IMG/VR virus record: IMGVR_UViG_3300029258_003221 | Span: 170,632-234,631 of that record | Strand: one strand, 5' to 3' | Length of the DNA stretch: 64,000 nt | Part shown: in pieces, positions 223 to 36,363 of the stretch | How positions within the stretch are numbered: position 1 is the first letter of the stretch | How the letters are laid out: each line of letters opens with the position of its first letter | Translations under genes and position numbers: made by a program | Notes under the pieces: model-generated | What the model was told of the DNA's origin: nothing | What the model saw: the letters and a program-made list of their open reading frames with translations, nothing else | Database searches by the model: none

Positions 223-497
223 GCTTCACTCACAGGTGGGTTCCGTCTTGAGATAAGTCTCATTTCAGATATGTGGGTGTCACAAGTGACATCACCCCAC
301 CAAACCACATAACAATCGGGATCACCTTCCCGTGGTCCGTCTCCGTCAACAAAGGTCACATCAGGATTGTAATAATCAACATCGCTTCGTCTTCGGACTT
401 CGCCCAGTGTTCCCAACGGAACTTCCATGTCAGAATTAGGGTCTTCACTGACCAACCTTTGTGTGGCTTTGACGATATCGCCAATTTGGTATTGCAT
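219..497 (-). CDS. hypothetical protein
   Basis: 92-aa ORF in the packed minus-strand array. Confidence 0.75.
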   Translation of the reverse strand: MQYQIGDIVKATQRLVSEDPNSDMEVPLGTLGEVRRRSDVDYYNPDVTFVDGDGPREGDPDCYVVWWGDVTCDTHISEMRLISRRNPPVSEA

Positions 498-499
498 AT

Positions 500-736
500 T
501 TATCCCTCTGCTGGAAAACCCTGAGCCAACAAAACTTCAGCTACTTTTTTAGAGATCCTCAAGCCTTTGGATTCACCATCATGGTAAACGACATTAAGTC
601 GGCAACCATTGAATCCGGGCGGGAGACCCACTGTCACATGCTGCATTTTTGGAAGAATGCGAACGCCATCTGTGTGACAGGCATGTTCTGAGCTTGTTGA
701 AGGGAGGTTTTCATTCGGTTCAAACATTTGAAACAT
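500..736 (-). CDS. hypothetical protein
   Basis: 78-aa ORF with GGAG SD. Confidence 0.75.
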   Translation of the reverse strand: MFQMFEPNENLPSTSSEHACHTDGVRILPKMQHVTVGLPPGFNGCRLNVVYHDGESKGLRISKKVAEVLLAQGFPAEG

Positions 737-771
737 TTTTACTTCTCCAAAGGTAGAAGGGTGTCAAGAAA

Positions 772-1311
772 TTAAATTGCTACTTTGTCCCACCATTGAA
801 CATAAGTGCCATCAAGCATAGCGTTCCAGTCACGCCATGCAGCAGGATCAATTCTTTTGGACCATGCCATGCTTTCAGGTCCAGTTTTGAGAAAAGCCCG
901 GTACTTGGCGTAATTGTACTTCTCCTGTGCCAATTCCTCAACAGTTTTGTTGAGTGCTTTTTTGGCACCCTGTACTGAGATTGTGCAGGCCCGACTTTTC
1001 CAATTTGGATCAGCAAGATTGGTTTTAGATAATTCGATTTCTCGTTCAGCACGTTCAACAAAGTAATGCCAGACCTTTGCTTTATCGGCAGCTTGCTTAT
1101 CTGCTTCGGCAATTGCTTCACGAACTGTTCGGAATGCACCGATTGTTGACATTCCTTCACGGAGGACACAACGCTGATCTTCAGTCAGATGCCAGAGTTT
1201 ACGTTTGTCAGATAGTTTCGGTGTAATGATCGTGAAGTTTTCACATTCACTACGTCGAATGACGATCTCACAATTCTTTGTTTTCTCTTTCGCAGGCTGA
1301 CTGAATTTCAT
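772..1311 (-). CDS. hypothetical protein
   Basis: 179-aa ORF with GGAG SD. Confidence 0.8.
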   Translation of the reverse strand: MKFSQPAKEKTKNCEIVIRRSECENFTIITPKLSDKRKLWHLTEDQRCVLREGMSTIGAFRTVREAIAEADKQAADKAKVWHYFVERAEREIELSKTNLADPNWKSRACTISVQGAKKALNKTVEELAQEKYNYAKYRAFLKTGPESMAWSKRIDPAAWRDWNAMLDGTYVQWWDKVAI

Positions 1312-1339
1312 GTCAAAAGTTCTCCATTTGTTGCCAAGG

Positions 1340-1436
1340 GACCGGGTGCGAGCCGGACTGACTTCCCTACTCCCCCCCTGTCTGGGGGAGAGTCATCCCT
1401 ACCATAGTCAGCAATGGTCGCACTAAGGAAGCGGTC
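1340..1436 (-). ncRNA. candidate structured RNA (nested rod-like hairpin)
   Basis: nested stems GACCG/CGGTC, GTGCGA/TCGCAC, CTGACT/AGTCAG and 10-bp ACTCTCCCCC/GGGGGGGAGT; GC-rich intergenic with no ORF. Confidence 0.5.
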
Positions 1437-1651
1437 TATGCCTCATTCTCAGTGCTTAGGGTTTGTATCTTTTTCTGAATAGCTTCAACCACCTGATCCA
1501 TTGTTGGTGGAAGTGAGTCTTTGTGTTTTGTTGTTATGAAGGTGTCCACAGATGCAACCCATGTCTTCACAGTCCAACCTCCGGTTTGACCATCAGCTCG
1601 AAAGTGAACATCACCCACATTATCTCGTATCCAATCAGAGTGTTTCATCAC
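1436..1651 (-). CDS. hypothetical protein
   Basis: 71-aa ORF, ATGA overlap. Confidence 0.7.
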   Translation of the reverse strand: MMKHSDWIRDNVGDVHFRADGQTGGWTVKTWVASVDTFITTKHKDSLPPTMDQVVEAIQKKIQTLSTENEA

Positions 1652-1995
1652 TTTGCCTCTGGTTTCAAAATCACTTCAAAGTGCTTCAGAACATCTTTCA
1701 CCTTTTCAGGTGTCAAACCTGTCTTCTCAGCGACTTTGTTGATTCTTTTGTCATGAATTTCATTTAGGCTATTCATGTAGCCTTCATCAATGATGGTTTC
1801 AACATCAATGTCTTCTCCACCATATTCAGTTGGATGGTGAACAGAAGATGAATTCATCCACTGTTGAACTCCAGCATCACAAAGTGTTTTACCCATATTC
1901 AGACAACCCTCACGAGTGCAAGGGAATACCAGCTCAGGTTCACCACAATGGATTTTACCATCTTCAACGTCAAGGTAAGAAAACATATCACTCAT
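1648..1995 (-). CDS. hypothetical protein
   Basis: 115-aa ORF. Confidence 0.75.
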   Translation of the reverse strand: MSDMFSYLDVEDGKIHCGEPELVFPCTREGCLNMGKTLCDAGVQQWMNSSSVHHPTEYGGEDIDVETIIDEGYMNSLNEIHDKRINKVAEKTGLTPEKVKDVLKHFEVILKPEAK

Positions 1996-2004
1996 ATCAC
2001 TATC

Positions 2005-2562
2005 CTAATCCCGTGTTTGTTCTGAGACATATACGTGGGCACGTCGCCCAACGATGATGCGTTCGTTCTTTCCCGGAAATCTCAACGGAGGATGTGTTTC
2101 GTGAAAGATGAACTGCTTGTCATGATCTATCAGGTGTCCTTGAGGAAGTTCAGGGAACTTCGGTCCACGACCTTTAACAAGGGCAATGTCCCCCTGTCGC
2201 TGAACGATGTTGTTTGCTCGACCATTCCAAATCCATTGAAGAGCCGAAAACACTTGTCTACAATCAGAGGGAACACAATGTGAAAAGTAAGTCCCTGCCT
2301 CGTTTCTCCCAACGAGAAATACAGACTGTGAATGGTGAGGGCCGAACTTATAACTTCTGGCATAAATCCTCTTGCGATGAACGGCAATGAGACCTAACCC
2401 TGCGCCGCCCATATCACAAAATGGTGCCGACTCCGCTTTCTTGGGGGCAACAAAGTCAAGAGCCTTGGTTGTGTGATAATCACCCTTTGCACTTCCATGT
2501 TCATCATAGAATTGTTCTGCAAGACGAGCCAGCTTTAGTGTCCGTTGAACAGCAGTTGCCAT
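2005..2562 (-). CDS. hypothetical protein with RQGD motif (paralogous domain in 12349..13488)
   Basis: FLVGRNEAGTYF...QRQGDIALV aligns with YLIGQDE-GTYF...LRQGEWFFV. Confidence 0.75.
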   Translation of the reverse strand: MATAVQRTLKLARLAEQFYDEHGSAKGDYHTTKALDFVAPKKAESAPFCDMGGAGLGLIAVHRKRIYARSYKFGPHHSQSVFLVGRNEAGTYFSHCVPSDCRQVFSALQWIWNGRANNIVQRQGDIALVKGRGPKFPELPQGHLIDHDKQFIFHETHPPLRFPGKNERIIVGRRAHVYVSEQTRD

Positions 2563-2612
2563 GATATTTCCTTAGACAAAAATTTTGATTAGTCACTGAA
2601 TGATGATTTCCA

Positions 2613-2849
2613 TCATTCTCTTGACAAAATGAGATCCGTTCCATCATCCACCAATACGGTGTCTTTGCCATACTTAGCTTGGAGTCGTTCTTTAACTTCA
2701 TCAAAGTCTAAGTGAACACACATCTCTGCGGTAAATCCACCAGTGTAGCCAGTAACGAACTGGTATTTCCCATTGTTTCTGTAGTCAGGAGTAATCCGGG
2801 TCAATTCGCCGCCGAATAGACGGTCCATCGTGAGTTGTCTTTCACTCAT
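2613..2849 (-). CDS. hypothetical protein
   Basis: start moved to ATG 2849 (MSERQL...) after GGAG SD, which avoids overlap with the upstream gene. Confidence 0.7.
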   Translation of the reverse strand: MSERQLTMDRLFGGELTRITPDYRNNGKYQFVTGYTGGFTAEMCVHLDFDEVKERLQAKYGKDTVLVDDGTDLILSRE

Positions 2850-2850
2850 A

Positions 2851-3438
2851 TCACTCTCCAAGAATGAGCATTTTGTTGTCGATAGGAATAAATCCGGGAA
2901 TACCAACATCTTCAGCAACCCACCTGTAAATGGGTTCTGCCAGATTTCCCAGATGGTGAAGAGGCTGACTGGCAATCCAGCCAACACGTTGAGCACACAG
3001 GGTGTCATCATCTGTTTCAAACACAGACTGACAGTATGCTTTAACTGGCCCTTCAGGCAGCTTGTATTGATTTTGTTCCGGTGCGTGTGGTGGTGGAGGG
3101 AGCATGAATACTTCTTTCAGCCTATTACTTCCAAAGTCGTAGTTGGTATTGTTGGCTGTGTCCACAAAGATGTAGGGTTCAACATCCTCAAAGACCCATC
3201 GTGTAGGATCAACAAGGGTGTCCCCATCGATGATCCAACCATGATGATGAAACTCAAACCTGCCAAATCGGGAAGTTGGAGCAATCGGCCCACAATACTG
3301 ACCATAGACTGCCTTGCCGGGAATCAACTTGTGTTTGACCAGTTGACAGGCAATGCCGTAGCAATTGCCTGCCCACTCATCTAATGGCCAGCCGATAAAC
3401 TCAGCAGCTTTAGCTGGATTCAATGGGTGCTTTGACAT
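2851..3438 (-). CDS. hypothetical protein
   Basis: 195-aa ORF. Confidence 0.8.
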   Translation of the reverse strand: MSKHPLNPAKAAEFIGWPLDEWAGNCYGIACQLVKHKLIPGKAVYGQYCGPIAPTSRFGRFEFHHHGWIIDGDTLVDPTRWVFEDVEPYIFVDTANNTNYDFGSNRLKEVFMLPPPPHAPEQNQYKLPEGPVKAYCQSVFETDDDTLCAQRVGWIASQPLHHLGNLAEPIYRWVAEDVGIPGFIPIDNKMLILGE

Positions 3439-3441
3439 AAC

Positions 3442-3624
3442 TCAGATTCCATCTTCTTTTAGAGTTTCGTAATCTTTTCGCAAATTTTCTGCGTCTGTTT
3501 CAAAACCGTTTTTCAACGATGGAACTTTGAACTTGCGTCTTTGTTTTGGAGGAAACAACGTAAATGTTGCCATGCCCTCCATAATCGAAGCCATGCCTTT
3601 GAGGATGAACCGAAACCAATTCAT
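3442..3624 (-). CDS. hypothetical protein
   Basis: 60-aa ORF, ATGA overlap. Confidence 0.6.
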   Translation of the reverse strand: MNWFRFILKGMASIMEGMATFTLFPPKQRRKFKVPSLKNGFETDAENLRKDYETLKEDGI

Positions 3625-4208
3625 GCAATTGCCTTGCCGTCATGAAGTTGTTGAACATGAGCAGCAAATCGGAACTGATAATCATCAACCTGAATCAGAA
3701 CCAGATCAGCCGGGTTTTCAGCACTGTCGGCACAATACTTTTCACCCAAACAAAGTTCAGCATACTTTTCAGCAACTTGTTCGTCGTTCAACTTAGTGAT
3801 ATTGGGAATGAAAGAATCCAATTTTCCACAACGAACAACCTCAAGAGTGTTCTGTGGATCGTTGACAAGAACATCTCGCCAAAACTCAACCAACTCTGTT
3901 TTTGCCTGAGTAAGTGTGAGGATCTTGGTGTTTTTGAAGGATCGTCTTTCCTGAGCTTTCAGGAATTCATCCCAATTGTCGTAGTCTTCCAGTTCGATCT
4001 GGAAGGGGCCATCCCAGTCACGTATCCACTGAGGGGTGCAACCTTCGTTACGAAGAGCATTACGCCGCTCATGTTCTTCGTGAAAATCGAAGTCGATAAC
4101 ATTGACTGGCACAGACCAGATCAGGCATCTGTCGCCACCGGGGGAGACAATAGCCTTGTTTTCGGTCTCCCATGCTTGGGGAATGAATCGAAGTCGGATG
4201 GTGTTCAT
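3621..4208 (-). CDS. hypothetical protein
   Basis: 195-aa ORF. Confidence 0.8.
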   Translation of the reverse strand: MNTIRLRFIPQAWETENKAIVSPGGDRCLIWSVPVNVIDFDFHEEHERRNALRNEGCTPQWIRDWDGPFQIELEDYDNWDEFLKAQERRSFKNTKILTLTQAKTELVEFWRDVLVNDPQNTLEVVRCGKLDSFIPNITKLNDEQVAEKYAELCLGEKYCADSAENPADLVLIQVDDYQFRFAAHVQQLHDGKAIA

Positions 4209-4260
4209 GTTAATTTATCCTTTTGATAAAAGTGATTCGATGTTTGTTAGATGGGTGTCA

Positions 4261-4533
4261 TCAATAGTCGCTGGGCATCAAAATCGTAGTCACGCTTCGA
4301 TCCCATTCTGTGATGATCCATAGAGTGCCACCACTGGTATCAAAAGATGACATGACACGTGACCCATTTTCAAGAGCAGCATCGTTTAGCTTGATATCGC
4401 CTGTACTTTGATTGCCCCAATCACCAGCAAAATGACGATTGAGAAGTTCCCTTCCATCAATGCTGTGTTCTTCCATGAAGTCAACAGCATTGGATGTTGC
4501 CACAGTTTGTTCGGATGTGAATTTTGGAATCAT
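4261..4533 (-). CDS. conserved plasmid/phage small protein (RH..GDWG...WIITE.DRS.TTIL.P.DY family)
   Basis: LLNRHFAGDWG...LWIITEWDRSVTTILMPSDY matches a widespread mobile-element family of unknown function. Confidence 0.8.
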   Translation of the reverse strand: MIPKFTSEQTVATSNAVDFMEEHSIDGRELLNRHFAGDWGNQSTGDIKLNDAALENGSRVMSSFDTSGGTLWIITEWDRSVTTILMPSDY

Positions 4534-4590
4534 GCTGCTTTTTCCGCTGCTTTAGTTCTTTCAAGTCGGTGAAAAACTTTGATGTGCATT

Positions 4591-4848
4591 TTAGTTCACC
4601 AAAATAGCGTTACAGAAATTGAGAGCAACTCGTTGTTGGGTGTCCGTTTCCGGTGCATGGTAGTCAACAACAAGAAATTCATCCTTGCCATCAAACTCTG
4701 GTCCTTTGACCTTGCAGACCTTTGGTGCAATGCTGGTGACTTTACCAACCATACCGGGCTGGAACACGATTTTGGGAGTGATCCCATAACCGCTGTAATA
4801 TCCTTCCACGGGCAGCTTGCATGTCACTTTGTCACCAACACCAATCAT
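4591..4848 (-). CDS. hypothetical protein
   Basis: 85-aa ORF. Confidence 0.7.
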   Translation of the reverse strand: MIGVGDKVTCKLPVEGYYSGYGITPKIVFQPGMVGKVTSIAPKVCKVKGPEFDGKDEFLVVDYHAPETDTQQRVALNFCNAILVN

Positions 4849-5351
4849 TATTCTGCCTTTATCAAAGTTTTGATGTCATCGGGAACGTGCTGGATTTCTT
4901 CATCAATCCAAACAGACAATGACCATTCAGGCATTGTCGCTTTCACGTATTCTTCATAGGTGTCGTAACTGTTCGTTTTAGGCTTTGTTTCACCAACACC
5001 ATCATCGATGATTCTGGCATCAAAATGAACAGCCAGTGGTTCCCTTAGCTCACGTTCAACCCACCATAGAAAATTCCAGTTGTGACCATGCTGGAATTCA
5101 ATACAGGGCATCTCTGTGTAATCCTCAGCTTCCTGATATTCTTCATCAGGATTGAATGTCTTGCCTGTCCAGAACTGGAGAGCGATATGCTGTTCCAGCT
5201 TGTGTCGGAGGGTCCAGATTGTATAGGTTGGTTTCTCGTGACGAACCAACATGAATTGAGGGAACTTCTTACGAACGATGCCCTCGATGAATGAGTGAAT
5301 TTCATCATCAGAGGGCATCGTTTTTGGAATCACAGCAGCAAGATTTGCCAT
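4848..5351 (-). CDS. hypothetical protein
   Basis: 167-aa ORF. Confidence 0.8.
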   Translation of the reverse strand: MANLAAVIPKTMPSDDEIHSFIEGIVRKKFPQFMLVRHEKPTYTIWTLRHKLEQHIALQFWTGKTFNPDEEYQEAEDYTEMPCIEFQHGHNWNFLWWVERELREPLAVHFDARIIDDGVGETKPKTNSYDTYEEYVKATMPEWSLSVWIDEEIQHVPDDIKTLIKAE

Positions 5352-6119
5352 TTAGATATTCAGATCGAAGCCTGAAAACTCCTCAGAGTAAACTTCGTTT
5401 CCGTCCTTTCCTTCTTTTTCCTGTTCGGCGAGATACTGATCTCGTGCCCAGATGACGAACCAACTCTGAGCAATATCGGTCAGTCTCATCTCAAAGTAGT
5501 TCTCACCGTCGATGACAAAACTCACCAGTCGCTTTTTGACCTTAGCAATTCGTTCATCATCAACGAACTCATTACCTTTCATCTGGGTGTCAACAACTTG
5601 TTCCAAGGTGTTCTTGACGGCTTCTCGGAACTCTTCGTTATCGCCGTAATCACGGTCGTGACAAGCATTGTGAACAACCTGACCTGCCAATGGCAAAGAA
5701 TCCAACAGGTCACCATAACCATCGTCACCTTTGTCCTCGACCACATTAAACAGAGGCTTGTACAAAGCTCGTTTGTAATGCTCCCATGTCTTAGCGAAGC
5801 GAAGTGCTTCATCAAAGGTGTAGGGGCATTCTTCGTAGCGATAGCCGCCTCTGGAATCCCAGACCTGAACCTTGCCAGCAGCACTCTGCACTCGGAAAAA
5901 CTCTGAGATAGCATCCTTTGCTGCATCCTGTCGGGTGATTCGTTCGACAACGAGCGGTCGGAAATACTTCTCAAGGATTTCCCAAAACCGATCACCATCC
6001 AACACAGGCAGTTCTTCCATGTAGTGGCGAAAGGCTTTACCAAACTTGGCACCGACACGGTTGTATTCCAGTGCCAGTTCCTGTGCATCGATTGTTTCCA
6101 TATCAAACAGTTTGGTCAT
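5352..6119 (-). CDS. hypothetical protein
   Basis: 255-aa ORF. Confidence 0.8.
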   Translation of the reverse strand: MTKLFDMETIDAQELALEYNRVGAKFGKAFRHYMEELPVLDGDRFWEILEKYFRPLVVERITRQDAAKDAISEFFRVQSAAGKVQVWDSRGGYRYEECPYTFDEALRFAKTWEHYKRALYKPLFNVVEDKGDDGYGDLLDSLPLAGQVVHNACHDRDYGDNEEFREAVKNTLEQVVDTQMKGNEFVDDERIAKVKKRLVSFVIDGENYFEMRLTDIAQSWFVIWARDQYLAEQEKEGKDGNEVYSEEFSGFDLNI

Positions 6120-7089
6120 TGTTTTCCTCTCTTAGTTTGAATCGTGAATAGATGAATTCGCTGCCACTAAGCTTTTCATAATCAGGAAAATCATAGTAGT
6201 GCTCGAAATCCCAAGTGCCATGAGGAACATTCAGCTTCACAGTGTCCTGTTTGCTCTTCACTTCCTTGTACCGGGTGTCACCAATAGTATTGAGATCAGC
6301 GGCTTCCCATCGCCAGACATCAAGACAAAGTTCGCCAATCTTCTCATGCCCTTCAATCAGTCCGTATTCTTCCTTTTGATCTTCTGTAAGATCATTATAT
6401 TCCTCTTGAGACATATTATCGAAGATTTGATCCTGTTTGTAACAACACCCCATAATAATTGATGTAGAGTCATTAGGGTGCGTATAGATACCAACACTCA
6501 TGTTGCCCATTTGACCACAGGCTACATTTTGATCGGCTTTGTATTTTGTGACATTGATTCGGCCACGGATTGCGTTAAGAGACCAATCCTCAGTGTATTT
6601 CTTGTCCTTCGGACAATCATCAACGATTCTGAAAATGTTAGCAAATATCAACGGACTCTGAACATTGATGCTGCCAGTGAGTGGTCTTGGCTCATGCAAT
6701 TCACAAAGGGTGTCTAAAGGCACCTTCAGATGCTCTCTCTTTTCTGGATCGAAGTAACCACGAAGAGTCAATCTATCGCCATCAAAAACCCATTTGAGAT
6801 GACGCCCACAGTTAAAGCAAAAAACGCCATCTGAAGCCCAGTTTTCCTTAACTTCATCTCCCTCTTGCACCTGCTTGTCTAAAAGAAGCTGATAGTGTGA
6901 ACGCATCTGAGCATCAGATACATTTCTCCAATTGCCATCATTAGATCCATTTGCTAAAGCTACAGTGTCATCACAGTCTTCAATGAACCGCAATGGATTG
7001 ATGTTGTGACCTTGGGTGTCAAGAACAATAGAACCATCCTTGACTTTCTCAGCTATTTCCTGAAACCTCATACAAGCCTCGCTTTTCAT
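6103..7089 (-). CDS. hypothetical protein (CxxC-containing)
   Basis: ~328-aa ORF with FCFNCG; start set at ATG 7089. Confidence 0.8.
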   Translation of the reverse strand: MKSEACMRFQEIAEKVKDGSIVLDTQGHNINPLRFIEDCDDTVALANGSNDGNWRNVSDAQMRSHYQLLLDKQVQEGDEVKENWASDGVFCFNCGRHLKWVFDGDRLTLRGYFDPEKREHLKVPLDTLCELHEPRPLTGSINVQSPLIFANIFRIVDDCPKDKKYTEDWSLNAIRGRINVTKYKADQNVACGQMGNMSVGIYTHPNDSTSIIMGCCYKQDQIFDNMSQEEYNDLTEDQKEEYGLIEGHEKIGELCLDVWRWEAADLNTIGDTRYKEVKSKQDTVKLNVPHGTWDFEHYYDFPDYEKLSGSEFIYSRFKLREENNDQTV

Positions 7090-7097
7090 TTTCCATG

Positions 7098-8451: not shown

Positions 8452-8458
8452 GTACGCA

Positions 8459-26523: not shown

Positions 26524-26531
26524 GTTGTTCC

Positions 26532-28602: not shown

Positions 28603-28810
28603 CTCCAGAGACTTTCTTTGTAACCAATCTCAATCCAATCAATGCGACTGAAAGAAAGATTAGAAAAGAGTCAAAGAGAAAAACAAAACCCAAAATCGCT
28701 TTATCTTGTCGAGATTGAATTTTGATCTCTTCGACATTGACCTGCATATAAAAAAGCAAGCCAATCATAATGAACACGGAAATGCCCAGAATGGCAAACA
28801 GTTGTTTCAT
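28577..28810 (-). CDS. two-TM membrane protein
   Basis: two hydrophobic segments. Confidence 0.75.
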   Translation of the reverse strand: MKQLFAILGISVFIMIGLLFYMQVNVEEIKIQSRQDKAILGFVFLFDSFLIFLSVALIGLRLVTKKVSGGDFDDSQH

Positions 28811-29337: not shown

Positions 29338-29906
29338 CAGCTTTCTCTCCGTTCCATGGGCATTGTGGGTTGATGAGGATCTCCCGACCAATCAGGATCA
29401 TTATAATCCTCATCATACCCTTCGTCATAATCGTCGTAGTCATCATAATGGATGGGAACGCCATTTTCATCATAATCAACATAGTCACAGCCACCCCATC
29501 TTACGATTTTGGAATCCGGGTTAAAAGGCCAAGGTAAGTAATGGTCCCAAAATGGAGACCCACCTTCTTCCAGAAACTGTTGCCACCCGGCATCGTTTTT
29601 CATTTCAACAGTCGATACCAGATGAAAGAAAAACCATGGAATGGTAAGTGTCAAAAACGAACCAATCAGAGGGGCAATAATGCCAACGCCGATAACCATG
29701 TCAATTTGATCTTCCAGAGTACAAACCCCATCAGTATAGCTCCAACCGACTTTTCCCTGTGGGGGCATAATCATGTAAGTCCAAAGTCCACAAATTAGAA
29801 ATCCGGGCACACAACATCGCAGGAACATCACGATACGTGGTGTCCGATTGCGACGACCAGAATAACCATTGTGGTGACCATAGTCACGTTGATTAAGCCA
29901 AGACAT
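29337..29906 (-). CDS. membrane protein with acidic D/Y-rich tail
   Basis: two TM segments; YDDYDDYDEGYDEDY. Confidence 0.7.
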   Translation of the reverse strand: MSWLNQRDYGHHNGYSGRRNRTPRIVMFLRCCVPGFLICGLWTYMIMPPQGKVGWSYTDGVCTLEDQIDMVIGVGIIAPLIGSFLTLTIPWFFFHLVSTVEMKNDAGWQQFLEEGGSPFWDHYLPWPFNPDSKIVRWGGCDYVDYDENGVPIHYDDYDDYDEGYDEDYNDPDWSGDPHQPTMPMERRES

Positions 29907-30262
29907 TATGATACCTCTTTTAACTCCGACCAATCAATACCCAAAAGTGCAAAGTTCTGAGTATTGTTTTGATTGTAATCCAAATACAAACGAGCAGCTT
30001 TCATCATGAAGACTTGAAGTCCGATCAAATCCACTGGATCATCACCGAAAACTTCTACTTCAACTGGTGCTACAAACTTACGAGGTGTCCCATTTGGATT
30101 GATGATTTCTTTTAAATCGATAGTTCTTGGATCTGAAATGAGCATTGCGTCGTCTTCATTCATAGACCAACCATGACCAGTCCAAAACTCATTTTCATTT
30201 GCTGCAAGAATGAATCGACGATGCTGCAAACTTCCTTTAGGGACCAAAGACAGTGATTTCAT
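29906..30262 (-). CDS. hypothetical protein
   Basis: 118-aa ORF. Confidence 0.75.
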   Translation of the reverse strand: MKSLSLVPKGSLQHRRFILAANENEFWTGHGWSMNEDDAMLISDPRTIDLKEIINPNGTPRKFVAPVEVEVFGDDPVDLIGLQVFMMKAARLYLDYNQNNTQNFALLGIDWSELKEVS

Positions 30263-31761
30263 ATGTTGTTCCTTCTTTCAAATCTTGATGCGAAACCATG
30301 GAATTTCTCTGGTTGGTCGAGTGCCAGACGCTTGAGCTTAGCTCCCAGAGAGCAACACTCCTCGTGAAAATCATCTGTTGCATGATTTTTCACCTTGTCA
30401 TGTGCAAGCTCATGAATAATAAGCCCGTCAAGACGAGGCGTGAAGCCTTCTTCAAAGAACTTGTTGCCCATGGTGAACTTGTTGTAGTCCAGCACATTAT
30501 CGCCATAACAGGCAATCCATGATCTGCCAACAAAACTATGACACATCACAAACCGAACAATGATACCATGGTCCAGCAATTCTGAACCCAACCATCGAGT
30601 GTATTCCTCGATTAAACCCATAGCAGGTGTCCACTTTTCCCTTGGGATCACTTCCACTGGGGTTGCATTTGGGTCATCACTGTACGCTCCTTTGCCCTCC
30701 ATGGGAAAAGCCTGAGAACTGCTGAAAAGGGCACCTGCCATCTTGGCATTAGCTCGCTGACCTTTTGTCAGTCCATGTGACGAAATCATATTGTATCCAG
30801 CCGTAATGGCTGCACCGTTTGCATCCGGGTTAGTTGGGTCAATCGATACCCTCTTAGGCCCAAACCGTTTAGTCATAAACGAATGTGTGGCCTCATCTGA
30901 ACACCGTTCATCACTGGACGCTTCATTGACCCAAGCTTCAGTGGTATCATCCTGTTCAATTTTTTCATGCATTTCATTGAGCACATGAGTACGAACAGCT
31001 TTAAGATAAGAAGGGGTCACATTGTCACGATCTACATTCAGAGGAACTTTCTGCTGAATGCTGTAATGCCATTTATCCCCAGTTTCTACAACCGGAATAC
31101 CCAATTCATAGAGACTCGGCACCTCATCAGGAAGAACATCAAAAATCTGAATTTCACACTTTCGTGCAGATGTACGAAGATCTTCACCGATCTCAGTGAA
31201 AAGAGTTTGCTCAAAAGTGTGAATTGGCTTTCTGCCTTTGATTTCATCACCATTAACAAACAGTTTTAGACCGGGACGAACAATGATTTTGTTCATGTAC
31301 TCAATAAGTTCAGTGTACTGCTGACGAGTACATTCCATGAGTGCCCAGAACTCTGTTCCATTGTCTCGCTTCCGACGAGGGTATTCATGTCGCCCTTCAT
31401 CATTGAATTCAACTGTGCCGCTTGTTGTGTGAACACGAGCTTCTTTGCAGAAAGCCAGAGCCATCTTACAGCCGACATTGAACCGACCAGCTTTAGTAGG
31501 ATCATCTTTCTTCTCAGATGGAGCATAGACTGTCCAAGCATGAGACAGATCAGTGTAACCCGGACCATTGTCAATGACGCTGATTTCAATCAATGGCTTT
31601 CCGGGGATTATCGCCACCTTGATATGACATTCAGTTGCCTCTGTGTCCATGACGTTTTGATAAAGTTCTGCCCCGATGATCCCAAAAGAACGTCTTTCAA
31701 CGAGTCGCTTGGCGACCATACGAAGACCATCTTTGTGTGCCGTAAACCAATTCTTACTCAT
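30259..31761 (-). CDS. GHKL (Hsp90/MutL/MORC-like) ATPase fused to C-terminal HExxH domain
   Basis: ELYQNVMD, IDNGPG, GRFNVG motifs; IIHELAH near the C-terminus. Confidence 0.8.
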   Translation of the reverse strand: MSKNWFTAHKDGLRMVAKRLVERRSFGIIGAELYQNVMDTEATECHIKVAIIPGKPLIEISVIDNGPGYTDLSHAWTVYAPSEKKDDPTKAGRFNVGCKMALAFCKEARVHTTSGTVEFNDEGRHEYPRRKRDNGTEFWALMECTRQQYTELIEYMNKIIVRPGLKLFVNGDEIKGRKPIHTFEQTLFTEIGEDLRTSARKCEIQIFDVLPDEVPSLYELGIPVVETGDKWHYSIQQKVPLNVDRDNVTPSYLKAVRTHVLNEMHEKIEQDDTTEAWVNEASSDERCSDEATHSFMTKRFGPKRVSIDPTNPDANGAAITAGYNMISSHGLTKGQRANAKMAGALFSSSQAFPMEGKGAYSDDPNATPVEVIPREKWTPAMGLIEEYTRWLGSELLDHGIIVRFVMCHSFVGRSWIACYGDNVLDYNKFTMGNKFFEEGFTPRLDGLIIHELAHDKVKNHATDDFHEECCSLGAKLKRLALDQPEKFHGFASRFERRNNI

Positions 31762-32134
31762 TTTCAATCCTTTTCCAATCATCTGGACCTAATGCCTTGA
31801 TTTCTTCAAGCAGTGTCAACACTTGTTCGTTGACGCTTTTGTAACATCCGGTGTCATGTTTCCACTCAAAGATACACATTCCATACACTGTGGAACAATG
31901 ACCTTCCTCATCAATTGAACCTATGACATATGGATGAATCTTAATTGATCCGACATACAAAATATCATAGGGTTCTCCGATACACAGCATCAATCTTTTA
32001 ATGTATCTCAGAGCGTCCATGACCACATCATTCAATTCATCAGAATTTGTGGCGTAGAGCTGATCAAATGATCTCCCACGAAGCCCCATATCTGTTTGAT
32101 GCACAGCCTCAACGCTGAGTTCGTATGTGTTCAT
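31754..32134 (-). CDS. hypothetical protein
   Basis: 126-aa ORF. Confidence 0.7.
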   Translation of the reverse strand: MNTYELSVEAVHQTDMGLRGRSFDQLYATNSDELNDVVMDALRYIKRLMLCIGEPYDILYVGSIKIHPYVIGSIDEEGHCSTVYGMCIFEWKHDTGCYKSVNEQVLTLLEEIKALGPDDWKRIENE

Positions 32135-32145
32135 TATTGGGTGTC

Positions 32146-32814
32146 CTAAACAGTTTCAGCTAAACAGATCGAAAACCCTTCGTAACAGTATCCATTCCGA
32201 CCTTCCAAAAAGACCTTGGCACCATGGTAGTCCTGATCAGACAGGATGCGTTCTAACTCTTCTTCCTGTCTCATACTTTCCCTGTGTGAAGCTAATTTTT
32301 GGCGGTAATCACCCCACTGCTCTTCCACAGTCTTCTTGAGATGAGGATCATCCTCAAATTCATCTGGCCTGTGTTTTGGTTGCTCTGGTTCTTCGCTATA
32401 AGATTCGTAGTACCCTTCTTCTTTTCTCTCCTGAATTACTTTCAAGCAAGCACGACCAATATGCTCAGTGGTGTTCGCTGCAAAGTATCGTTCGCCATGT
32501 TTTTCTCGCAGAACGATAATGTACTGTCGATGCAAAGCCGAAACCAAATTGTCCCACTTCTTCTGAGAGAGAACCAACTTATCATCTGTAAGCGGATCTT
32601 TATTAGAAGATTGAAAATTAAGGAGTGAAGGGACAGGAACACATATGCGTACCCACTTGTCTGCTATTGGACAAAATTGCTCAAGCTTAAACCGACGAAC
32701 GTGATGTTTGTTATGTCGAACGTATGGATCAATTTCAACAAGACGAAACTTACCACTTTGATTTTCATTAAATTCACTGATCGTCATTCCAGCACTCCTA
32801 AAGGCATTCGCCAA
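32146..32814 (-). CDS. hypothetical protein
   Basis: 222-aa ORF. Confidence 0.75.
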   Translation of the reverse strand: MANAFRSAGMTISEFNENQSGKFRLVEIDPYVRHNKHHVRRFKLEQFCPIADKWVRICVPVPSLLNFQSSNKDPLTDDKLVLSQKKWDNLVSALHRQYIIVLREKHGERYFAANTTEHIGRACLKVIQERKEEGYYESYSEEPEQPKHRPDEFEDDPHLKKTVEEQWGDYRQKLASHRESMRQEEELERILSDQDYHGAKVFLEGRNGYCYEGFSICLAETV

Positions 32815-32840
32815 TTTACTTCGATTTCATTGGGTGTCCT

Positions 32841-32871
32841 AAAAGAAGGGGCAGGTTTCCCTGCCCCTTAA
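32841..32871 (-). terminator. intrinsic terminator
   Basis: AAGGGGCAGG/CCTGCCCCTT stem + T-run. Confidence 0.85.
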
Positions 32872-32872
32872 A

Positions 32873-34033
32873 TCATGCAGAATGTTTGGCGTATCGCCGC
32901 TCATCCATATATTCTGCTGTCACCTGATCACCGGCATGTTCAATGCCACGTCGATCCAGTTCGGCAAGCCCCGCTCTTGTTAGTGTGATACCACGACTGG
33001 TAGATACAACATACGGACCATTGCCTGCAACAGACATCAATGGAGGCAGAATCACACGCTCTAACGCCTCTGCCTTACAGTTTGCCACTCTTTGGAGATT
33101 ATCCTTGGAGATTGGACGACTGCCCAATGCTTCAAGAATCTTGACTTCTCGACGGTCCATGCCGAACTCATCAAGTCCCAGATTGTCAGCAACGATTCTG
33201 GCAGCAGTCTGCCAATCATTGCCGTGCTGATTTTTAGTCATCTCCATAAGTCGAGCGAAATCCTTCGCCAAACGAGGAACAATTCGATATTTGGCAACTG
33301 CGTTACACGCTTCTTCGGAGAAGTGCGGGTAATTAAGCTTGATGATCTGAGCGATCTCTTTCTTACCAGCAGGTTGCCATCTCAAAGTTGTACCCAATCG
33401 CTGTGCGAAAGCATCGAACAACTTACCTTCCTCAGTGGTAGCACCGACCCAACAAATTTCTCGGCAGTCCACTTTGAAAGTTCTAGTTTTCTTTCCTGTG
33501 CCGGTCGTGATCTTCATCCAACCGTCACCATACTCCATGCCGTTCAGAAGACCACCCTGCATGAGTGATTTACTTAAAGCATGTGCCTCATCAAAGAACA
33601 GAATACACGGAGGAATCTGATACTCATCTTTGGCAACTTCAACGATCTTGATGCCCTTCTTAGCAAAGGTTTCACAGATCAATTGAAACAAGTTGTAGGT
33701 GCTGGAAAGAGCATCCGCCTGTACAAAGACAAACGGAATACCAATAGTTTCGGCAAACTGCCGAACAATAAAAGTCTTACCTTGGCCAGATGTCGCATAA
33801 ATTGCAAATGACATCCCACGACAACTGTGATTCGGAAGACCAAATGCGTTGAATGCAAATGTCTTGAGGGTGCTCATATTACCCTCATTTTCCTTACTCA
33901 CAATTACTTTGTTGAGTGGACATTTTGGATGAGCCAAGGCTTCACGGATTTCTTCATCAGTTGGCCTATCTGGAAAGCCGCCCGGATTGAAGAACTGAAT
34001 TTGAAGCTGCTTAGCATATTTTTTCATTAACAT
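32873..34033 (-). CDS. ruvB: RuvB-like AAA+ ATPase
   Basis: Walker A ATSGQGKT, Walker B FFDEAH, VGATTEEGKL, PRLA, GLDEFGMD...E.VILPPL...TSRG winged-helix tail; start uncertain. Confidence 0.75.
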   Translation of the reverse strand: MLMKKYAKQLQIQFFNPGGFPDRPTDEEIREALAHPKCPLNKVIVSKENEGNMSTLKTFAFNAFGLPNHSCRGMSFAIYATSGQGKTFIVRQFAETIGIPFVFVQADALSSTYNLFQLICETFAKKGIKIVEVAKDEYQIPPCILFFDEAHALSKSLMQGGLLNGMEYGDGWMKITTGTGKKTRTFKVDCREICWVGATTEEGKLFDAFAQRLGTTLRWQPAGKKEIAQIIKLNYPHFSEEACNAVAKYRIVPRLAKDFARLMEMTKNQHGNDWQTAARIVADNLGLDEFGMDRREVKILEALGSRPISKDNLQRVANCKAEALERVILPPLMSVAGNGPYVVSTSRGITLTRAGLAELDRRGIEHAGDQVTAEYMDERRYAKHSA

Positions 34034-34089
34034 CCCTTTCTGTCGTTGAAACTTTCTTGTTACGACTTTGATGGGTGTCAACTATAGAT

Positions 34090-34983
34090 TTAGGCCACTT
34101 TCTCCTTAGCAAACACGTCTTTCACTTTTTTCAGTGCTCGATCATAGGCGTAAGTTGATGCCATGCGGCTCACAGAATGCTTCTTGGATACTTCTGATTT
34201 TTTGCCGCCACCCAGAACAGTATAAAGAACATCACGCTCCAGTTCTGACAAACCGACTTCTTCAATCACAGCTCGGACCTGATCGATTTCCATGGTCACT
34301 TCGCCATCGAAACTGCTGTAACTGTAACTTGATACAAAATCTTCCCAAGCTACCTCTGGCCCATCAACTGCCACGGCTAACGCTGAAAAGCATTCTTCAC
34401 GATCAGAATCATTGATCTCCAGTTTATTTGCGGCCTGCTCAAAAGAAAGACCTTTAGACATAAGGTCTCGCAGATCTGGGAGCATACGAAGAATTCGTTT
34501 TTTGACGCTTGAAAGGAAATGATCAGTGCGAATGTAATCGATCATTCGATTCCGAATGGCATTACAGGAATATGTATCAAATTTCGCATTGCCGCTATAG
34601 GCAAACATCGAATCGGAGATTGCCCAAATCCCCTCTTGAATGAAATCTTCAATATCGACAGCACGATGACGTAATCTGTGTGCTTTGTAGAAAGGCAGAA
34701 CAATACCGGGCACAAGGCGACAATAACCCTGAAGGACAGGATACTCAATTTCTTTGACAGAGTCCATCGTCTGTTTGACGTAATCTGTCAAAGTCTGAAG
34801 AGTTCCATTGTGATATCTACGCCGAAACTCTTTGATAGAGGGATTTTCGGTGTCAAATTCTTTTTCTGCCGCCGCACGAATAATTGGCTGTGCGTCAGCC
34901 ATAATTGAAGAATATTTCTGTTCTTCTTCTTCTGAGAGAGTACGAGGTTTAATACACCCAATCATGAGGAGATTCCCTTTCAT
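34090..34983 (-). CDS. sigma-70 family sigma factor
   Basis: region 2 EDFIQEGIWAI...KFDTYSCNAIRNRMIDYIR; region 4 LSELERDVL...SEVSK...ALKKVK. Confidence 0.8.
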   Translation of the reverse strand: MKGNLLMIGCIKPRTLSEEEEQKYSSIMADAQPIIRAAAEKEFDTENPSIKEFRRRYHNGTLQTLTDYVKQTMDSVKEIEYPVLQGYCRLVPGIVLPFYKAHRLRHRAVDIEDFIQEGIWAISDSMFAYSGNAKFDTYSCNAIRNRMIDYIRTDHFLSSVKKRILRMLPDLRDLMSKGLSFEQAANKLEINDSDREECFSALAVAVDGPEVAWEDFVSSYSYSSFDGEVTMEIDQVRAVIEEVGLSELERDVLYTVLGGGKKSEVSKKHSVSRMASTYAYDRALKKVKDVFAKEKVA

Positions 34984-35112
34984 CGATTACGGAAGTTATT
35001 TTCTTGATGGGTGTCTGACATGACAAACGCTGGCCATGTTCACATGGATCACCACATTCATAGAAAACTGTCTTCGAGTCGATTTACAGGGTGTCCTCTT
35101 TTGCACCAAATA

Positions 35113-35147
35113 GAAAAAGCCGCCAACCAGTTTCCCAGTAGACGACT
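35113..35147 (-). terminator. intrinsic terminator
   Basis: AGTCGTC/GGCGGCT G-U-containing stem, GAAA loop, T5 run. Confidence 0.6.
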
Positions 35148-35169
35148 TTTTCTCGGGGTGACGTTCCCT

Positions 35170-36363
35170 TTATTTCTTACGAACCCGAAGAGTTTTCGCT
35201 TCTTCCGCCTGAATCCTTTTTTCGGATTCTTCGCAAGCCTGTTCATACGTGATGTTCATACAGGCTGCCACACCTTTGCGGAATTCAGCATTGTCTTCAT
35301 CTGTCTGGTCGAACAATTTTTGCATTTCCTTGAGCGGAATCGGTTTCGCACGAGTTGATTGGCGTGCAGTTGATTCGCTGTAATGCTGCTCACCCAGAGC
35401 TTTTCGTGTAGCAGCAGTTAAGGTCATGCGACCAGATTCCAAATCAGCCCGGTCTTTATCTGTAAGACCAGTTGCTGGTTTGATGACTTCACCTGTTTCT
35501 TCGTCGATCCTTGCTTCTTTTCGAGGACGAAGCAGAGCCTCACGGTTTCTGACCGTGCCTTTCTTCTTCTGTCCGGGATAAAGATACTCAGCAATTTCTG
35601 TTAGGGTCCACTTCTTACCAGAAGCAGGATTGATTCTGGATCGGAAGTTTTTGTAGATCGCCGCTTCCTGAAGAGCAGTCAATCGTTTGTTGCTGAGATT
35701 TTCTTCGACTGAAATCAGGAAGCCTTCATCATCATTCACCTGTTTATTGGTGGCGATGACTTCTGCTGGATAAATTTTGGCACCTTCAACTTCATCCGCA
35801 ACATCAACACGACTTTTTGCGTGGTTGTACAAAGTTGCTGATGTTCGTCGATTTCCTGCCAACAGAGTGAAGTTGTAATTACCATCACTCAGTTTATTGC
35901 CTTTACGCACCATTACCGGATGGAACTGCCCATAACGGGCAAGACGACGTGCAAATGCAACAATAGATGAAGCAGGTGGGGTCACCTGTTTGGAATCTTC
36001 GTCCTCTACCGTTGCCACGTCCAGTTCCATTGGCTCACATTCATGTGTTTCAAACAGACTGACAACTTGTCGAACCACTTCAATGTCTTCTGACAGAGCC
36101 ATGTGGATCAGTGAATGTTCTTTGTCTGAAGAATCAACCAGCTTGTAACCAAGAGCAAACAGATTTTCTGGTTCATTCCGACAGTTATCCACTGCTGTGA
36201 TTCTTGACAGTGGAATCGTCCAATGGTCAATTTTGACCTGCTTGGCCTTTGGACGATTGTCAGATTTCTTTGTTCTTGTCTTAGCTGGCTTCTTCGTTTC
36301 GTCAGCTTGTTGGGTGTCAACAACTGTTTCTTCAGCAGGAGCTTCAGCGGTTTCGGCAGCCAT
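35170..36363 (-). CDS. ParB/Srx-family (ParB-like CTPase) protein with HTH
   Basis: GQFHPVMV...LLAGNRR (GxRR) and VEENLSNKRLTALQEAAIY...TLTEIAEYL; GGAG SD before ATG 36363. Confidence 0.8.
   Translation of the reverse strand: MAAETAEAPAEETVVDTQQADETKKPAKTRTKKSDNRPKAKQVKIDHWTIPLSRITAVDNCRNEPENLFALGYKLVDSSDKEHSLIHMALSEDIEVVRQVVSLFETHECEPMELDVATVEDEDSKQVTPPASSIVAFARRLARYGQFHPVMVRKGNKLSDGNYNFTLLAGNRRTSATLYNHAKSRVDVADEVEGAKIYPAEVIATNKQVNDDEGFLISVEENLSNKRLTALQEAAIYKNFRSRINPASGKKWTLTEIAEYLYPGQKKKGTVRNREALLRPRKEARIDEETGEVIKPATGLTDKDRADLESGRMTLTAATRKALGEQHYSESTARQSTRAKPIPLKEMQKLFDQTDEDNAEFRKGVAACMNITYEQACEESEKRIQAEEAKTLRVRKK

What the first reader, a model, noticed from the sequence alone, without database searches (positions are those of the whole stretch)
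275..36318. Strand-polarised GACACCC motif at ~1/kb over a 36-kb domain with a sharp boundary
Seen: 34 copies of GGGTGTC on + (GACACCC on the coding strand) in 1-36.3 kb, only 2 in the last 27.7 kb, and none seen in the opposite orientation (manual scan). A simple base-composition model at roughly 41% GC (my estimate) predicts about 1 copy in 36 kb. The base following the motif on the coding strand is A in 18 and T in 11 of 34. Copies lie inside unrelated ORFs in all three frames (mostly as GAC-ACC-C, D-T-x) and also at gene junctions or just after stops or terminators (759, 4253, 11246, 15281, 22916, 32139, 32832, 35009, 35089). The foreign IS has none. Established: oriented short motifs embedded in coding DNA are known for Chi, KOPS/SRS and Noc/ParB-type sites. 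Inference: this marks a functional genome domain. It could be (a) loading or binding sites for the ParB-like protein at the boundary, (b) a Chi/KOPS-like polar signal that protects or translocates the first-entering DNA, (c) an RNA signal (antitermination, processing or decay) on the early transcript, or (d) a promoter element for the phage sigma. I know of no described phage system like this.
Basis: partly seen in the sequence, partly recalled or inferred. Interest (0 to 1): 0.92.

Follow-up and report, generated by a model that had tools for sequence, protein, structure and literature searches.

The report
Per-gene promoter motif of a jumbo phage
The strand-polarised GACACCC motif is real, and it is most likely the core of a phage-specific promoter, probably read by the phage's own sigma factor, repeated about once per gene across a 78-kb one-directional block of small genes in an uncultivated jumbo phage.

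Summary
GGGTGTC occurs 36 times on +, never on -, with 34 copies left of 36.3 kb. The core is the hexamer GACACC on the coding strand.

The window is the last 64 kb of a 234,631-bp phage contig. Walking left shows the domain is 78 kb, not 36 kb. It holds 179 co-directional sites and none opposite, and it ends where the gene block meets convergent genes.

A synonymous-codon shuffle does not remove the excess (165 observed, 67±4 expected). The sites behave like promoters:
- About one site per gene.
- A peak 40-70 nt upstream of start codons.
- Placement directly after stop codons and terminators.
- A shared flank, GACACC-Y-NN-tAA...yA(+18), even inside ORFs.

A sigma-70-family gene lies 1.3-2.2 kb inside the boundary. 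Three other lineages with its orthologue (47-57% identity) carry the same motif at the same intergenic positions. The motif-poor right side uses sigma-70-like promoters instead.

It is a new member of a known kind. Its density, strictness and rising gradient are unusual. No transcript data exist.

The parts
1..36318 (-). Window part of the GACACC array. It holds 55 GACACC sites on the coding (-) strand, 34 of them GACACCC, and none in the opposite orientation. The array continues left of the window to contig position 128,752.
   Evidence: Searches give the full coordinate lists. Searches show the extension.
36312..36318 (-). Most upstream site of the domain. It lies in frame 0 within the first ~20 codons of the ParB-like ORF.
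35089..35095 (-). First of a tandem pair of sites upstream of the sigma gene. It follows the terminator-like GC stem and T-run after the ParB-like gene.
   Evidence: The same arrangement is seen in L015, L018 and L019.
35009..35015 (-). Second site of the tandem pair, 50 nt upstream of the conserved MIGC start of the sigma gene.
34090..34965 (-). Sigma-70-family factor (291 aa from the conserved start). It is the candidate reader of the motif.
   Evidence: Pfam Sigma70_r2 scores 30.7 bits against a cutoff of 24. NCBIfam TIGR02937 covers regions 2-4, and the nearest families are FliA/WhiG. The AlphaFold model (pLDDT 74) matches sigma chains of RNAP initiation complexes at probability 1.0.
34073..34079 (-). 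Site 10 nt after the sigma stop codon and 46 nt upstream of the ATG of the AAA gene.
   Evidence: Conserved in all four lineages.
32873..34027 (-). AAA+ ATPase (RuvB_N/AAA). It is a conserved neighbour of the sigma gene.
32841..32867 (-). Terminator-like hairpin and T-run after the AAA gene. It abuts the next site.
   Evidence: L018 and L019 have the same layout.
32832..32838 (-). Site directly after that terminator, 51 nt upstream of the next start codon.
32139..32145 (-). Site abutting a stop codon, 11 nt before the next ATG.
22916..22922 (-). Site overlapping a TGA stop codon, 53 nt upstream of the next start.
15281..15287 (-). Site 1 nt after a stop codon, about 50 nt upstream of the next start.
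11246..11252 (-). Intergenic site.
8608..8614 (-). Intergenic site by my gene calls, 15 nt from the next start.
7568..7574 (-). Intergenic site by my gene calls, 42 nt upstream of the next start.
4253..4259 (-). Site 1 nt after a stop codon, 51 nt upstream of the next start, followed by a CA-rich leader.
759..765 (-). Intergenic site 29 nt upstream of the next start.
35170..36363 (-). First gene of the domain. It has a weak ParB/Noc-like N-terminal match and is transcribed from the sigma-70-like boundary promoter.
   Evidence: One search gives E 1.5e-4, below cutoff. Pfam finds nothing. The orthologue in L015 is at 8147-9346.
36443..36470 (-). Sigma-70-like promoter (TTTACA-N16-TAGAAT, within GCTTTACA...CGTAGAAT) at the domain boundary.
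   Evidence: The same element stands upstream of the L015 orthologue.
42903..42931 (-). Sigma-70-like promoter of the same class, in the right domain.
46067..46095 (-). Sigma-70-like promoter of the same class, in the right domain.
51425..51453 (-). Sigma-70-like promoter of the same class (TTTACA-N17-TAAAAT).
61330..61358 (-). Sigma-70-like promoter of the same class (TTTACA-N17-TAAAAT).
28080..28107 (-). The only sigma-70-like promoter of this class inside the window part of the GACACC domain.
25182..26360 (+). TnpB (IS605 OrfB / Cas12f-like TNB) insertion. It has no site and lies in the 24748-28213 gap between sites.
52484..52490 (-). Isolated heptamer inside an ORF in the right domain. Counts there are near chance.
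   Evidence: The right domain has 7 GACACC against 3.2 expected.
62707..62713 (-). Isolated heptamer inside the GT2 ORF in the right domain. Near chance.

Best explanation
GACACC is the core of a single-block promoter. The extended form is K-GACACC-Y-NN-tAA, with a pyrimidine-A step about 18 nt after the G.

The promoter defines one temporal class of genes in an uncultivated jumbo phage. That class is a 78-kb, one-directional block of about 180 small genes, most with no Pfam match.

The most likely reader is host core RNA polymerase carrying the phage's own FliA/WhiG-like sigma factor (window 34090-34965). That gene sits 1.3-2.2 kb inside the boundary.

Proposed sequence of events (inferred):
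1. Host sigma-70 holoenzyme uses GCTTTACA-N15-CGTAGAAT promoters in the right domain, including the one at 36443-36470.
2. Some sigma gets made, either by terminator read-through or by basal use of its tandem GACACC promoters.
3. Sigma then fires its own promoters and the roughly 180 downstream ones.

What is shown:
- The motif statistics.
- The phasing of sites with genes and terminators.
- The shared flanks.
- The sigma fold.
- Conservation of motif, position and sigma together in four lineages.

What is inferred:
- That transcription starts at these sites.
- That this sigma reads them.
For: 1. Strength and polarity. There are 179 co-directional sites and 0 opposite in 78 kb. The synonymous shuffle gives 67±4 against 165 observed. 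71 of 112 Asp-Thr dipeptides are written GACACC against 11.2 expected.

2. Gene phasing. 110 of 183 inter-start intervals hold exactly one site, against a null of 59.5±6.3. 44 sites lie 40-70 nt upstream of a start codon, against 12.4 expected.

3. Placement. 13 intergenic sites begin 0-1 nt after a stop codon and 4 overlap a TGA. A conserved CA-rich leader, then GGGAGAG and ATG, follows many of them. Two of the four strong terminators in the domain are followed by the motif at 9 nt.

4. Flanks. Sites inside ORFs keep the same flanks in all three frames, beyond what codon-position composition predicts: A+10 p=2e-5, A+11 p=3e-6, A+18 p=7e-7, K-1 p=8.5e-8. TAA at +9..+11 followed by A at +18 matches the usual spacing from a -10 element to the start site.

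5. Antisense depletion. The opposite orientation is at 0 against 10.9±3.2 expected, as expected if a bare hexamer can fire.

6. The sigma gene.

7. Footprint in relatives. The only sigma orthologues found (57%, 48% and 47% identity) lie on contigs L018, L019/L020 and L015. All three carry GACACC-N3-TA(A/G), co-directional only inside the domain. The positions match: after the terminator behind the ParB-like gene, in tandem before sigma, just after the sigma stop, and after the AAA terminator (three of four lineages). The domain boundary and the sigma-70-like promoter upstream of the ParB-like gene are also conserved.

8. Relatives that share the 507-aa and AAA genes but have no sigma nearby (L003, L004, L005, L013) lack the motif.

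9. Sigma-70-like promoter matches inside the domain are at chance: 20 found against 21.8 expected. The right domain has its own promoter class.
Against: - There are no transcript 5' ends, no cultured phage and no known host.
- The sigma gene itself lies behind a terminator and its own GACACC sites, so its first expression needs read-through or another factor.
- No -35-like element was found, although the protein seems to have a region 4.
- The hexamer is almost invariant. One-mismatch variants are not enriched, which is stricter than typical sigma promoters.
- About a third of sites (59 of 179) lie more than 200 nt from the next start. Some genes hold 2-4 sites.
- Sites per gene rise from about 0.6 to 1.5 along the block. 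Simple gene expression does not require that.
- The four lineages are related, so motif and sigma occurring together may reflect shared descent.
- About 113 kb of the genome was not read, so a phage RNA polymerase cannot be excluded.
Confidence: 0.55

Rival explanations
1. The motif is a promoter, but it is read by something other than the neighbouring sigma. Candidates are a phage-encoded or virion-delivered RNA polymerase, a host alternative sigma, or host polymerase redirected by another early phage protein. In that case the sigma gene is simply a member of this regulon and directs a later class.
For: All the promoter evidence applies equally. In every lineage the sigma gene lies downstream of a terminator and of GACACC sites. 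In SPO1-type cascades that layout is typical of a gene expressed by the preceding class (established knowledge). The near-invariant core and the AT-rich positions at -5/-4 recall single-subunit polymerase promoters. SP6 promoters contain GACAC (from memory, not tested).
Against: No polymerase gene was seen in the roughly 130 kb read. No second conserved motif was found upstream of the adjacent opposite-strand block that a late sigma could read. Motif and sigma occur together wherever they could be checked.
Confidence: 0.2
2. The motif acts in RNA. It could be a cleavage, stability or translation signal placed ahead of each cistron of long polycistronic transcripts, read by a phage or host RNA-binding protein or nuclease.
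For: It is on the coding strand only, at about one per gene, 40-70 nt before start codons, and followed by a conserved CA-rich leader. The block has few terminators, about 4 strong ones in 78 kb, so long transcripts are plausible. A few sites overlap GAGGA-like ribosome-binding sequences 10-20 nt before the ATG.
Against: Sites sit immediately after strong terminators in four lineages, where little RNA would reach them. The pyrimidine-A step at +17/+18 and the TAA at -10-like spacing fit transcription initiation. The motif has no secondary structure. Depletion of the reverse complement is not predicted for an RNA signal.
Confidence: 0.1
3. The motif is a polar DNA signal unrelated to transcription. 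It could be a Chi-like site for a host RecBCD/AddAB enzyme, a KOPS/SRS-like guide for a translocase or packaging motor, or a preferred T7-type primase site. The template strand 5'-GGGTGTC-3' contains GTGTC.
For: Orientation purity is absolute, sites are embedded in coding sequence through codon choice, and density rises toward one end. The spacing of 250-700 bp and the presence of GTC fit priming sites (from memory of T7 primase specificity).
Against: None of these predicts one-per-gene phasing, fixed distance to start codons, abutment to stop codons and terminators, downstream A-rich flanks, or conserved intergenic positions. Orientation does not flip at the convergence point, and the neighbouring block has no array. 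The motif is absent from the right 38 kb of the same one-directional region.
Confidence: 0.07
4. The motif is a loading or binding site for the ParB-like protein encoded at the boundary.
For: A ParB/Noc-like N-terminal match exists in the first gene of the domain, and the gene is syntenic in the relatives.
Against: The match is below the curated cutoffs and Pfam finds nothing. ParB sites are roughly 16-bp palindromes present in a few copies. Here there is an asymmetric hexamer in 179 copies, strictly co-oriented with genes.
Confidence: 0.03

Closest known systems
Phage sigma cascades: Bacillus phage SPO1 gp28 and gp33/34, T4 gp55 late promoters (TATAAATA), and the phiEco32 ECF-like sigma
   Same: A phage-encoded sigma-70-family protein redirects host core polymerase to a phage-specific promoter class that marks a temporal gene block. 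As with T4 gp55, the element is a single short, nearly invariant block with no -35 element, and many copies lie inside upstream coding sequence.
   Different: The sequence (GACACC-Y-NN-TAA) is unrelated to any of those promoters. The copy number (about 180) and the roughly one-per-gene density over 78 kb are much higher. The sigma gene sits inside its own presumed regulon. Sites per gene rise along the block. None of this has been tested experimentally here.
Sigma-28 (FliA/WhiG) promoters, consensus TAAAGTTT-n11-GCCGATAA (PMC2859248)
   Same: The phage sigma's nearest curated families are FliA/WhiG. The sigma-28 -10 region is a long block with CC a few bases before TAA, as in the ACC-Y-NN-TAA part of this motif.
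   Different: No TAAA-type -35 element is present. The GACA part has no counterpart. The CC-to-TAA spacing agrees only if the seventh base is counted. The similarity is suggestive, not a match.
Early and late promoter motifs of jumbo phages with their own polymerases (AR9, phiKZ; PMC5312081, PMC7598289)
   Same: These are short, phage-specific consensus elements repeated in front of many genes of one temporal class in a genome over 200 kb.
   Different: Those phages use multisubunit phage polymerases without sigma, and their motifs are AT-rich. This phage encodes a sigma, and no phage polymerase was seen in the part read.
Chi and KOPS/SRS polar motifs
   Same: Short oriented motifs, over-represented, written into coding DNA through codon choice.
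   Different: Those are not phased with genes, stop codons or terminators, and they switch orientation with replication arms. This motif follows gene structure and stops at a transcription boundary.

Membership tests
Sigma-70 family factor (gene 34090-34965) | Sigma region 2 domain | tested here: met
   Pfam PF04542 scores 30.7 bits against a cutoff of 24. The orthologues carry the same precomputed domain.
Sigma-70 family factor (gene 34090-34965) | C-terminal region 4 and overall multi-domain sigma fold | tested here: met
   TIGR02937 aligns residues 101-288 to model positions 18-162 of 165. It scores 41.3 bits here (cutoff 42.9) and 52.6 bits for orthologue P0004. Foldseek's top 30+ hits are sigma chains of initiation complexes at probability 1.0, though TM is only about 0.3 because the domains are placed differently.
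Sigma-70 family factor (gene 34090-34965) | Binds core RNA polymerase and directs initiation | not testable with these tools
   Needs biochemistry.
Temporal-class promoter | Co-directional with genes and depleted in antisense | tested here: met
   179 co-directional against 0 opposite. The shuffle expects 10.9±3.2 in antisense.
Temporal-class promoter | Fixed position relative to gene starts, about one per transcription unit | tested here: met
   The 40-70 nt peak holds 44 sites against 12.4 expected. 110 of 183 intervals have exactly one site against 59.5±6.3. Gene calls were my own crude ones.
Temporal-class promoter | Conserved at orthologous intergenic positions while the surrounding sequence diverges | tested here: met
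   Four lineages and three intergenic positions.
Temporal-class promoter | Melting element and start site at proper spacing | tested here: inconclusive
   tAA at +9..+11 and yA at +17/+18 are enriched. Only 22 of 165 sites have the full TAA.
Temporal-class promoter | Primary transcript 5' ends map just downstream | not testable with these tools
   No transcriptome is available.
Sigma-28/FliA-type promoter | -35 TAAA element about 11 nt upstream of the -10 block | tested here: not met
   There is no positional information upstream of -8, and no enriched positioned 4-mer.
Chi-like site | Distribution independent of gene structure, and recognised by a host RecBCD/AddAB enzyme | tested here: not met
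   Sites are phased with starts, stops and terminators. Host recognition could not be tested because the host is unknown.
KOPS/SRS-like | Orientation converges on a dif-like or terminus point, with the mirror orientation on the other arm | tested here: not met
   Beyond the convergence point at contig 128,299 there is no mirror array (0 mirror-orientation copies in 15 kb). Only 3 chance-level copies remain in the same absolute orientation.
ParB parS/NBS site | Palindromic site of about 16 bp, in few copies | tested here: not met
   The motif is an asymmetric hexamer in 179 copies on one strand only.
T7-type primase recognition site | Template 5'-GTC-3' trinucleotide with a preferred extension | tested here: inconclusive
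   GGGTGTC contains GTGTC (seen directly in the sequence). The gene phasing and downstream flanks are not expected for priming sites. No primase gene was identified.

The most novel reading that the evidence does not exclude
The array may be more than a set of gene promoters. It could be a genome-scale lattice of co-oriented polymerase-loading sites, one every 250-700 bp. The sites are written into ORFs by codon choice and rise in density toward the distal end of an almost terminator-free 78-kb block. Such a lattice could drive transcription-powered entry of the genome (as in T7, but sigma-based). It could instead sequester host core polymerase for host shut-off, or keep sigma engaged with elongating polymerase.
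Probability: 0.12. Interest if true: 0.75.

Novelty: new member of a known kind. Interest (0 to 1): 0.45.

Why it matters
If confirmed, this gives an uncultivated jumbo-phage lineage a readable transcription programme. Sigma-70-like promoters mark one region. A strict, easily recognised hexamer marks about 180 genes of another. A dedicated sigma gene sits at the switch point.

The pairing is compact and testable: one protein and a 12-nt element. It could serve as an orthogonal sigma/promoter pair.

The array also shows how strongly a promoter can shape codon choice. 63% of Asp-Thr dipeptides in the block are written as the motif. The unexplained density gradient and the extra sites inside genes deserve a transcriptome.

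Tried and rejected
- Megablast of window 1-20000 against GenBank phages found no match.
- A literature search for GACACCC/GGGTGTC found only unrelated primer sequences.
- Distant relatives found through the 507-aa protein (L003, L004, L005, LR745208.1 = L013) lack the motif and lack a sigma orthologue nearby. Their own skewed k-mers (GGCAAAAA, CGGTGTAT) are either shared coding positions or a different, sparse element.
- Searches for more sigma relatives in IMG/VR and JGI metagenomes returned only the same lineages.
- Other contigs of the same phage match this one with no substitutions over the overlaps (one gap in L012), so site conservation could not be measured within the species.
- In-ORF sites are mostly not conserved in position between the window and L015. 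One of six is.
- A search for a -35-like element was negative.
- A sigma-70 -10 hexamer at 17-bp spacing after GACACC is absent.
- Primase, Chi, KOPS and ParB readings were considered and set aside, for the reasons given under the rival explanations.
- I did not read contig positions 1-113,091, so the polymerase gene content of the whole genome is unknown.

Full report
**1. Observation**

GGGTGTC occurs 36 times in the window, always on the + strand. 34 copies lie between 275 and 36318 and 2 lie to the right. Dinucleotide shuffles give 5.3 on average and never more than 12. All long ORFs in the window lie on the - strand, so the coding-strand motif is GACACCC.

The specific unit is the hexamer GACACC.
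- Window 1-36500: 55 copies on the coding strand and 0 on the other.
- Right part: 7 and 1.
- The seventh base is C 34, T 12, G 6, A 3.
- Single-mismatch variants are not enriched.

**2. Where the window sits, and the true size of the domain**

The window is bases 170,632-234,631 of a 234,631-bp metagenomic phage contig, IMGVR_UViG_3300029258_003221 = Ga0309772_1000111. Distant relatives are huge uncultured phages of 371-485 kb.

I walked leftward with the encoded proteins. The array continues for another 42 kb. It runs from contig 206,943 down to 128,752, a span of 78.2 kb.
- It holds 179 GACACC on the coding strand (113 GACACCC, 41 GACACCT).
- It holds none on the opposite strand.
- It stops where the one-directional block of about 180 small genes, nearly all without a Pfam match, meets convergent larger genes at contig 128,299.
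- The next 15 kb has no co-directional copy.
- To the right of the boundary, 27.7 kb of window plus 10 kb beyond it hold only chance-level copies.

Density is not uniform. It rises from about 1.2 per kb near the boundary to about 4.5 per kb at the distal end. Sites per gene rise from about 0.6 to about 1.5. Spacing is much more regular than random, with a coefficient of variation of 0.42-0.44.

**3. It is not a coding artefact**

I shuffled synonymous codons within each domain.
- The shuffle gives 67±4 copies against 165 observed.
- It gives 10.9±3.2 (minimum 4) in the opposite orientation against 0 observed.
- Of 112 Asp-Thr dipeptides in the domain, 71 are written GAC-ACC, against 11.2 expected from codon usage. 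In the right domain the figure is 2 of 21.

**4. Anatomy of the sites**

27% of sites are intergenic, where 13-14% of the sequence is non-coding.

Relative to start codons:
- 44 sites lie 40-70 nt upstream, against 12.4 expected.
- 110 of 183 inter-start intervals hold exactly one site, against a null of 59.5±6.3.

This per-gene pattern accounts for most of the regular spacing.

Intergenic sites typically begin 0-1 nt after the preceding stop codon or overlap a TGA. Many are followed by a similar CA-rich leader, a GGGAGAG-type ribosome-binding site and ATG. Strong terminators are rare in the block, with four found. Two of them are followed by the motif at 9 nt.

Aligning all sites shows weak but consistent flanks:
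- A/T at -5 and -4.
- G/T at -3 and -1.
- C/T at +6.
- tAA at +9 to +11.
- A pyrimidine-A step at +17/+18.

The same flanks appear in sites inside ORFs in each of the three frames. They exceed codon-position composition, with p values from 2e-5 to 7e-7 for the A positions. So sites inside ORFs are under the same constraint as intergenic ones.

There is no -35-like element upstream, and no sigma-70 -10 hexamer at 17-bp spacing. TAA at +9..+11 and A at +18 match the usual 7-nt step from the end of a -10 element to the start site. That spacing rule is established knowledge. Applying it here is inference.

**5. The surroundings**

The right, motif-poor domain uses a different promoter class that looks like sigma-70: GCTTTACA-N15-CGTA(G/A)AATG. 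It occurs on the coding strand at window 61358, 51453, 46095, 42931 and 36470, and once inside the domain at 28107. Each copy lies 26-79 nt before a start codon. The copy at 36443-36470 stands exactly at the boundary, in front of the first gene of the domain.

That first gene (35170-36363) has only a weak ParB/Noc-like match.

Next comes a terminator-like stem with a T-run, then two GACACCC sites at 35089 and 35009. After them lies a sigma-70-family gene (34090-34965).
- Pfam region 2 scores above cutoff.
- NCBIfam's sigma-70 superfamily model covers regions 2-4, and the nearest families are FliA/WhiG.
- An AlphaFold model (pLDDT 74) finds only sigma chains of RNA-polymerase initiation complexes as top structural matches.

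Inside the domain, sigma-70-like promoter matches are at chance level, 20 against 21.8.

**6. Relatives**

A search of 5.8 billion proteins found only three orthologues of this sigma, at 57%, 48% and 47% identity. Their contigs show the same gene order: sigma-70-like promoter, ParB-like gene, terminator, (Zn-ribbon gene), sigma, AAA ATPase, then onward to the 507-aa protein.

All three carry GACACC co-directionally at the same intergenic positions:
- after the terminator behind the ParB-like gene,
- in tandem upstream of sigma,
- just after the sigma stop codon,
- after the AAA terminator, in three of the four lineages.

The consensus there is gGACACC-N3-TA(A/G), while the rest of each spacer has diverged.

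In L015 the array starts at the same syntenic point. From there it has 12 co-directional copies and 0 opposite in 11.5 kb. One site inside an ORF is conserved in position and five are not.

Relatives that share the 507-aa and AAA proteins but have no sigma nearby have no such motif.

**7. Interpretation**

The evidence fits a promoter of one temporal gene class:
- polarity with genes and depletion in antisense,
- one site per gene and a fixed distance to start codons,
- terminator-then-motif cassettes,
- -10-like spacing,
- a phylogenetic footprint in four lineages,
- a separate promoter class next door.

The neighbouring sigma is the most economical reader. I put that at 0.55, and at about 0.75 for a promoter of any kind.

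Open points:
- The sigma gene lies behind its own sites and a terminator.
- The hexamer is unusually invariant.
- There is no -35 element.
- A third of sites are far from any start codon.
- Sites per gene increase along the block.
- 113 kb of the genome was not read.

Chi, KOPS, primase and ParB readings do not predict the gene-phased anatomy. An RNA signal is hard to reconcile with sites placed right after strong terminators.

**8. Comparison and novelty**

The system works like phage sigma cascades (SPO1, T4 gp55, phiEco32). Its single-block element is closest in style to T4 late promoters, with a loose resemblance to the long -10 region of sigma-28 promoters, TAAAGTTT-n11-GCCGATAA (PMC2859248). 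It is not a sigma-28 promoter, because the -35 feature was tested and not met.

I rate it a new member of a known kind. Three quantitative features are unusual: about 180 copies, 63% of Asp-Thr dipeptides recruited, and a density gradient. No paper in the library mentions the motif.

Noticed in passing
L011:18167-18307 (+), contig about 134.3 kb, inside the motif domain: A 141-nt element scores as tmRNA in Rfam (RF00023, 53.7 bits against a gathering score of 47) and in ARAGORN, which reports a tag peptide. A GACACCC site follows it directly. A second tRNA-like 3' end (GGTTCGAGTCCC) in L016 at about 8760-8790 was not called.
   Followed up: partly
window 53320-63112 (-): A cluster that looks like a peptide-maturation (RiPP-like) set. 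It has a peptidase C39, two radical-SAM/SPASM proteins, a sulfotransferase-like protein, a metallophosphoesterase, a ClpX-like ATPase, an M50 peptidase and a GT2 glycosyltransferase.
   Followed up: no
window 63102-63884 (-): A 260-aa ion-channel protein (Ion_trans at 4e-23, Ion_trans_2) encoded by the phage.
   Followed up: no
window 48157-49809 (-) and 46379-46927 (-): A PARP catalytic domain with a WGR domain, and a Nudt16-like NUDIX hydrolase, both in the sigma-70-promoter domain. They are possible modifiers of host proteins or RNA 5' ends.
   Followed up: no
L025:1-10000 (beyond the window's right end): A clear ParB_N protein (458 aa), a PRPP synthetase and a CsrA homologue on the opposite strand. 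The clear ParB of this phage is here, not at the motif boundary.
   Followed up: no
window 25182-26360 (+): TnpB (OrfB_IS605 plus a Cas12f-like TNB domain) is one of only two + strand ORFs that look like genes. It lies in a 3.5-kb gap of the motif array.
   Followed up: partly
window 36443-36470, 42903-42931, 46067-46095, 51425-51453, 61330-61358, 28080-28107 (-): A second, sigma-70-like promoter class with an extended consensus, GCTTTACA-N15-CGTA(G/A)AATG. It is conserved in relative L015 at 2989 and about 8060.
   Followed up: yes
window 36655-37410 (+): A 251-aa ORF on the opposite strand just outside the boundary, with no family match. L015 has two opposite-strand genes at the same place.
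   Followed up: no
contig about 128-147 kb (L011, L016): GC content rises from 0.44 to 0.49 along the motif domain toward its distal end, in parallel with site density.
   Followed up: no
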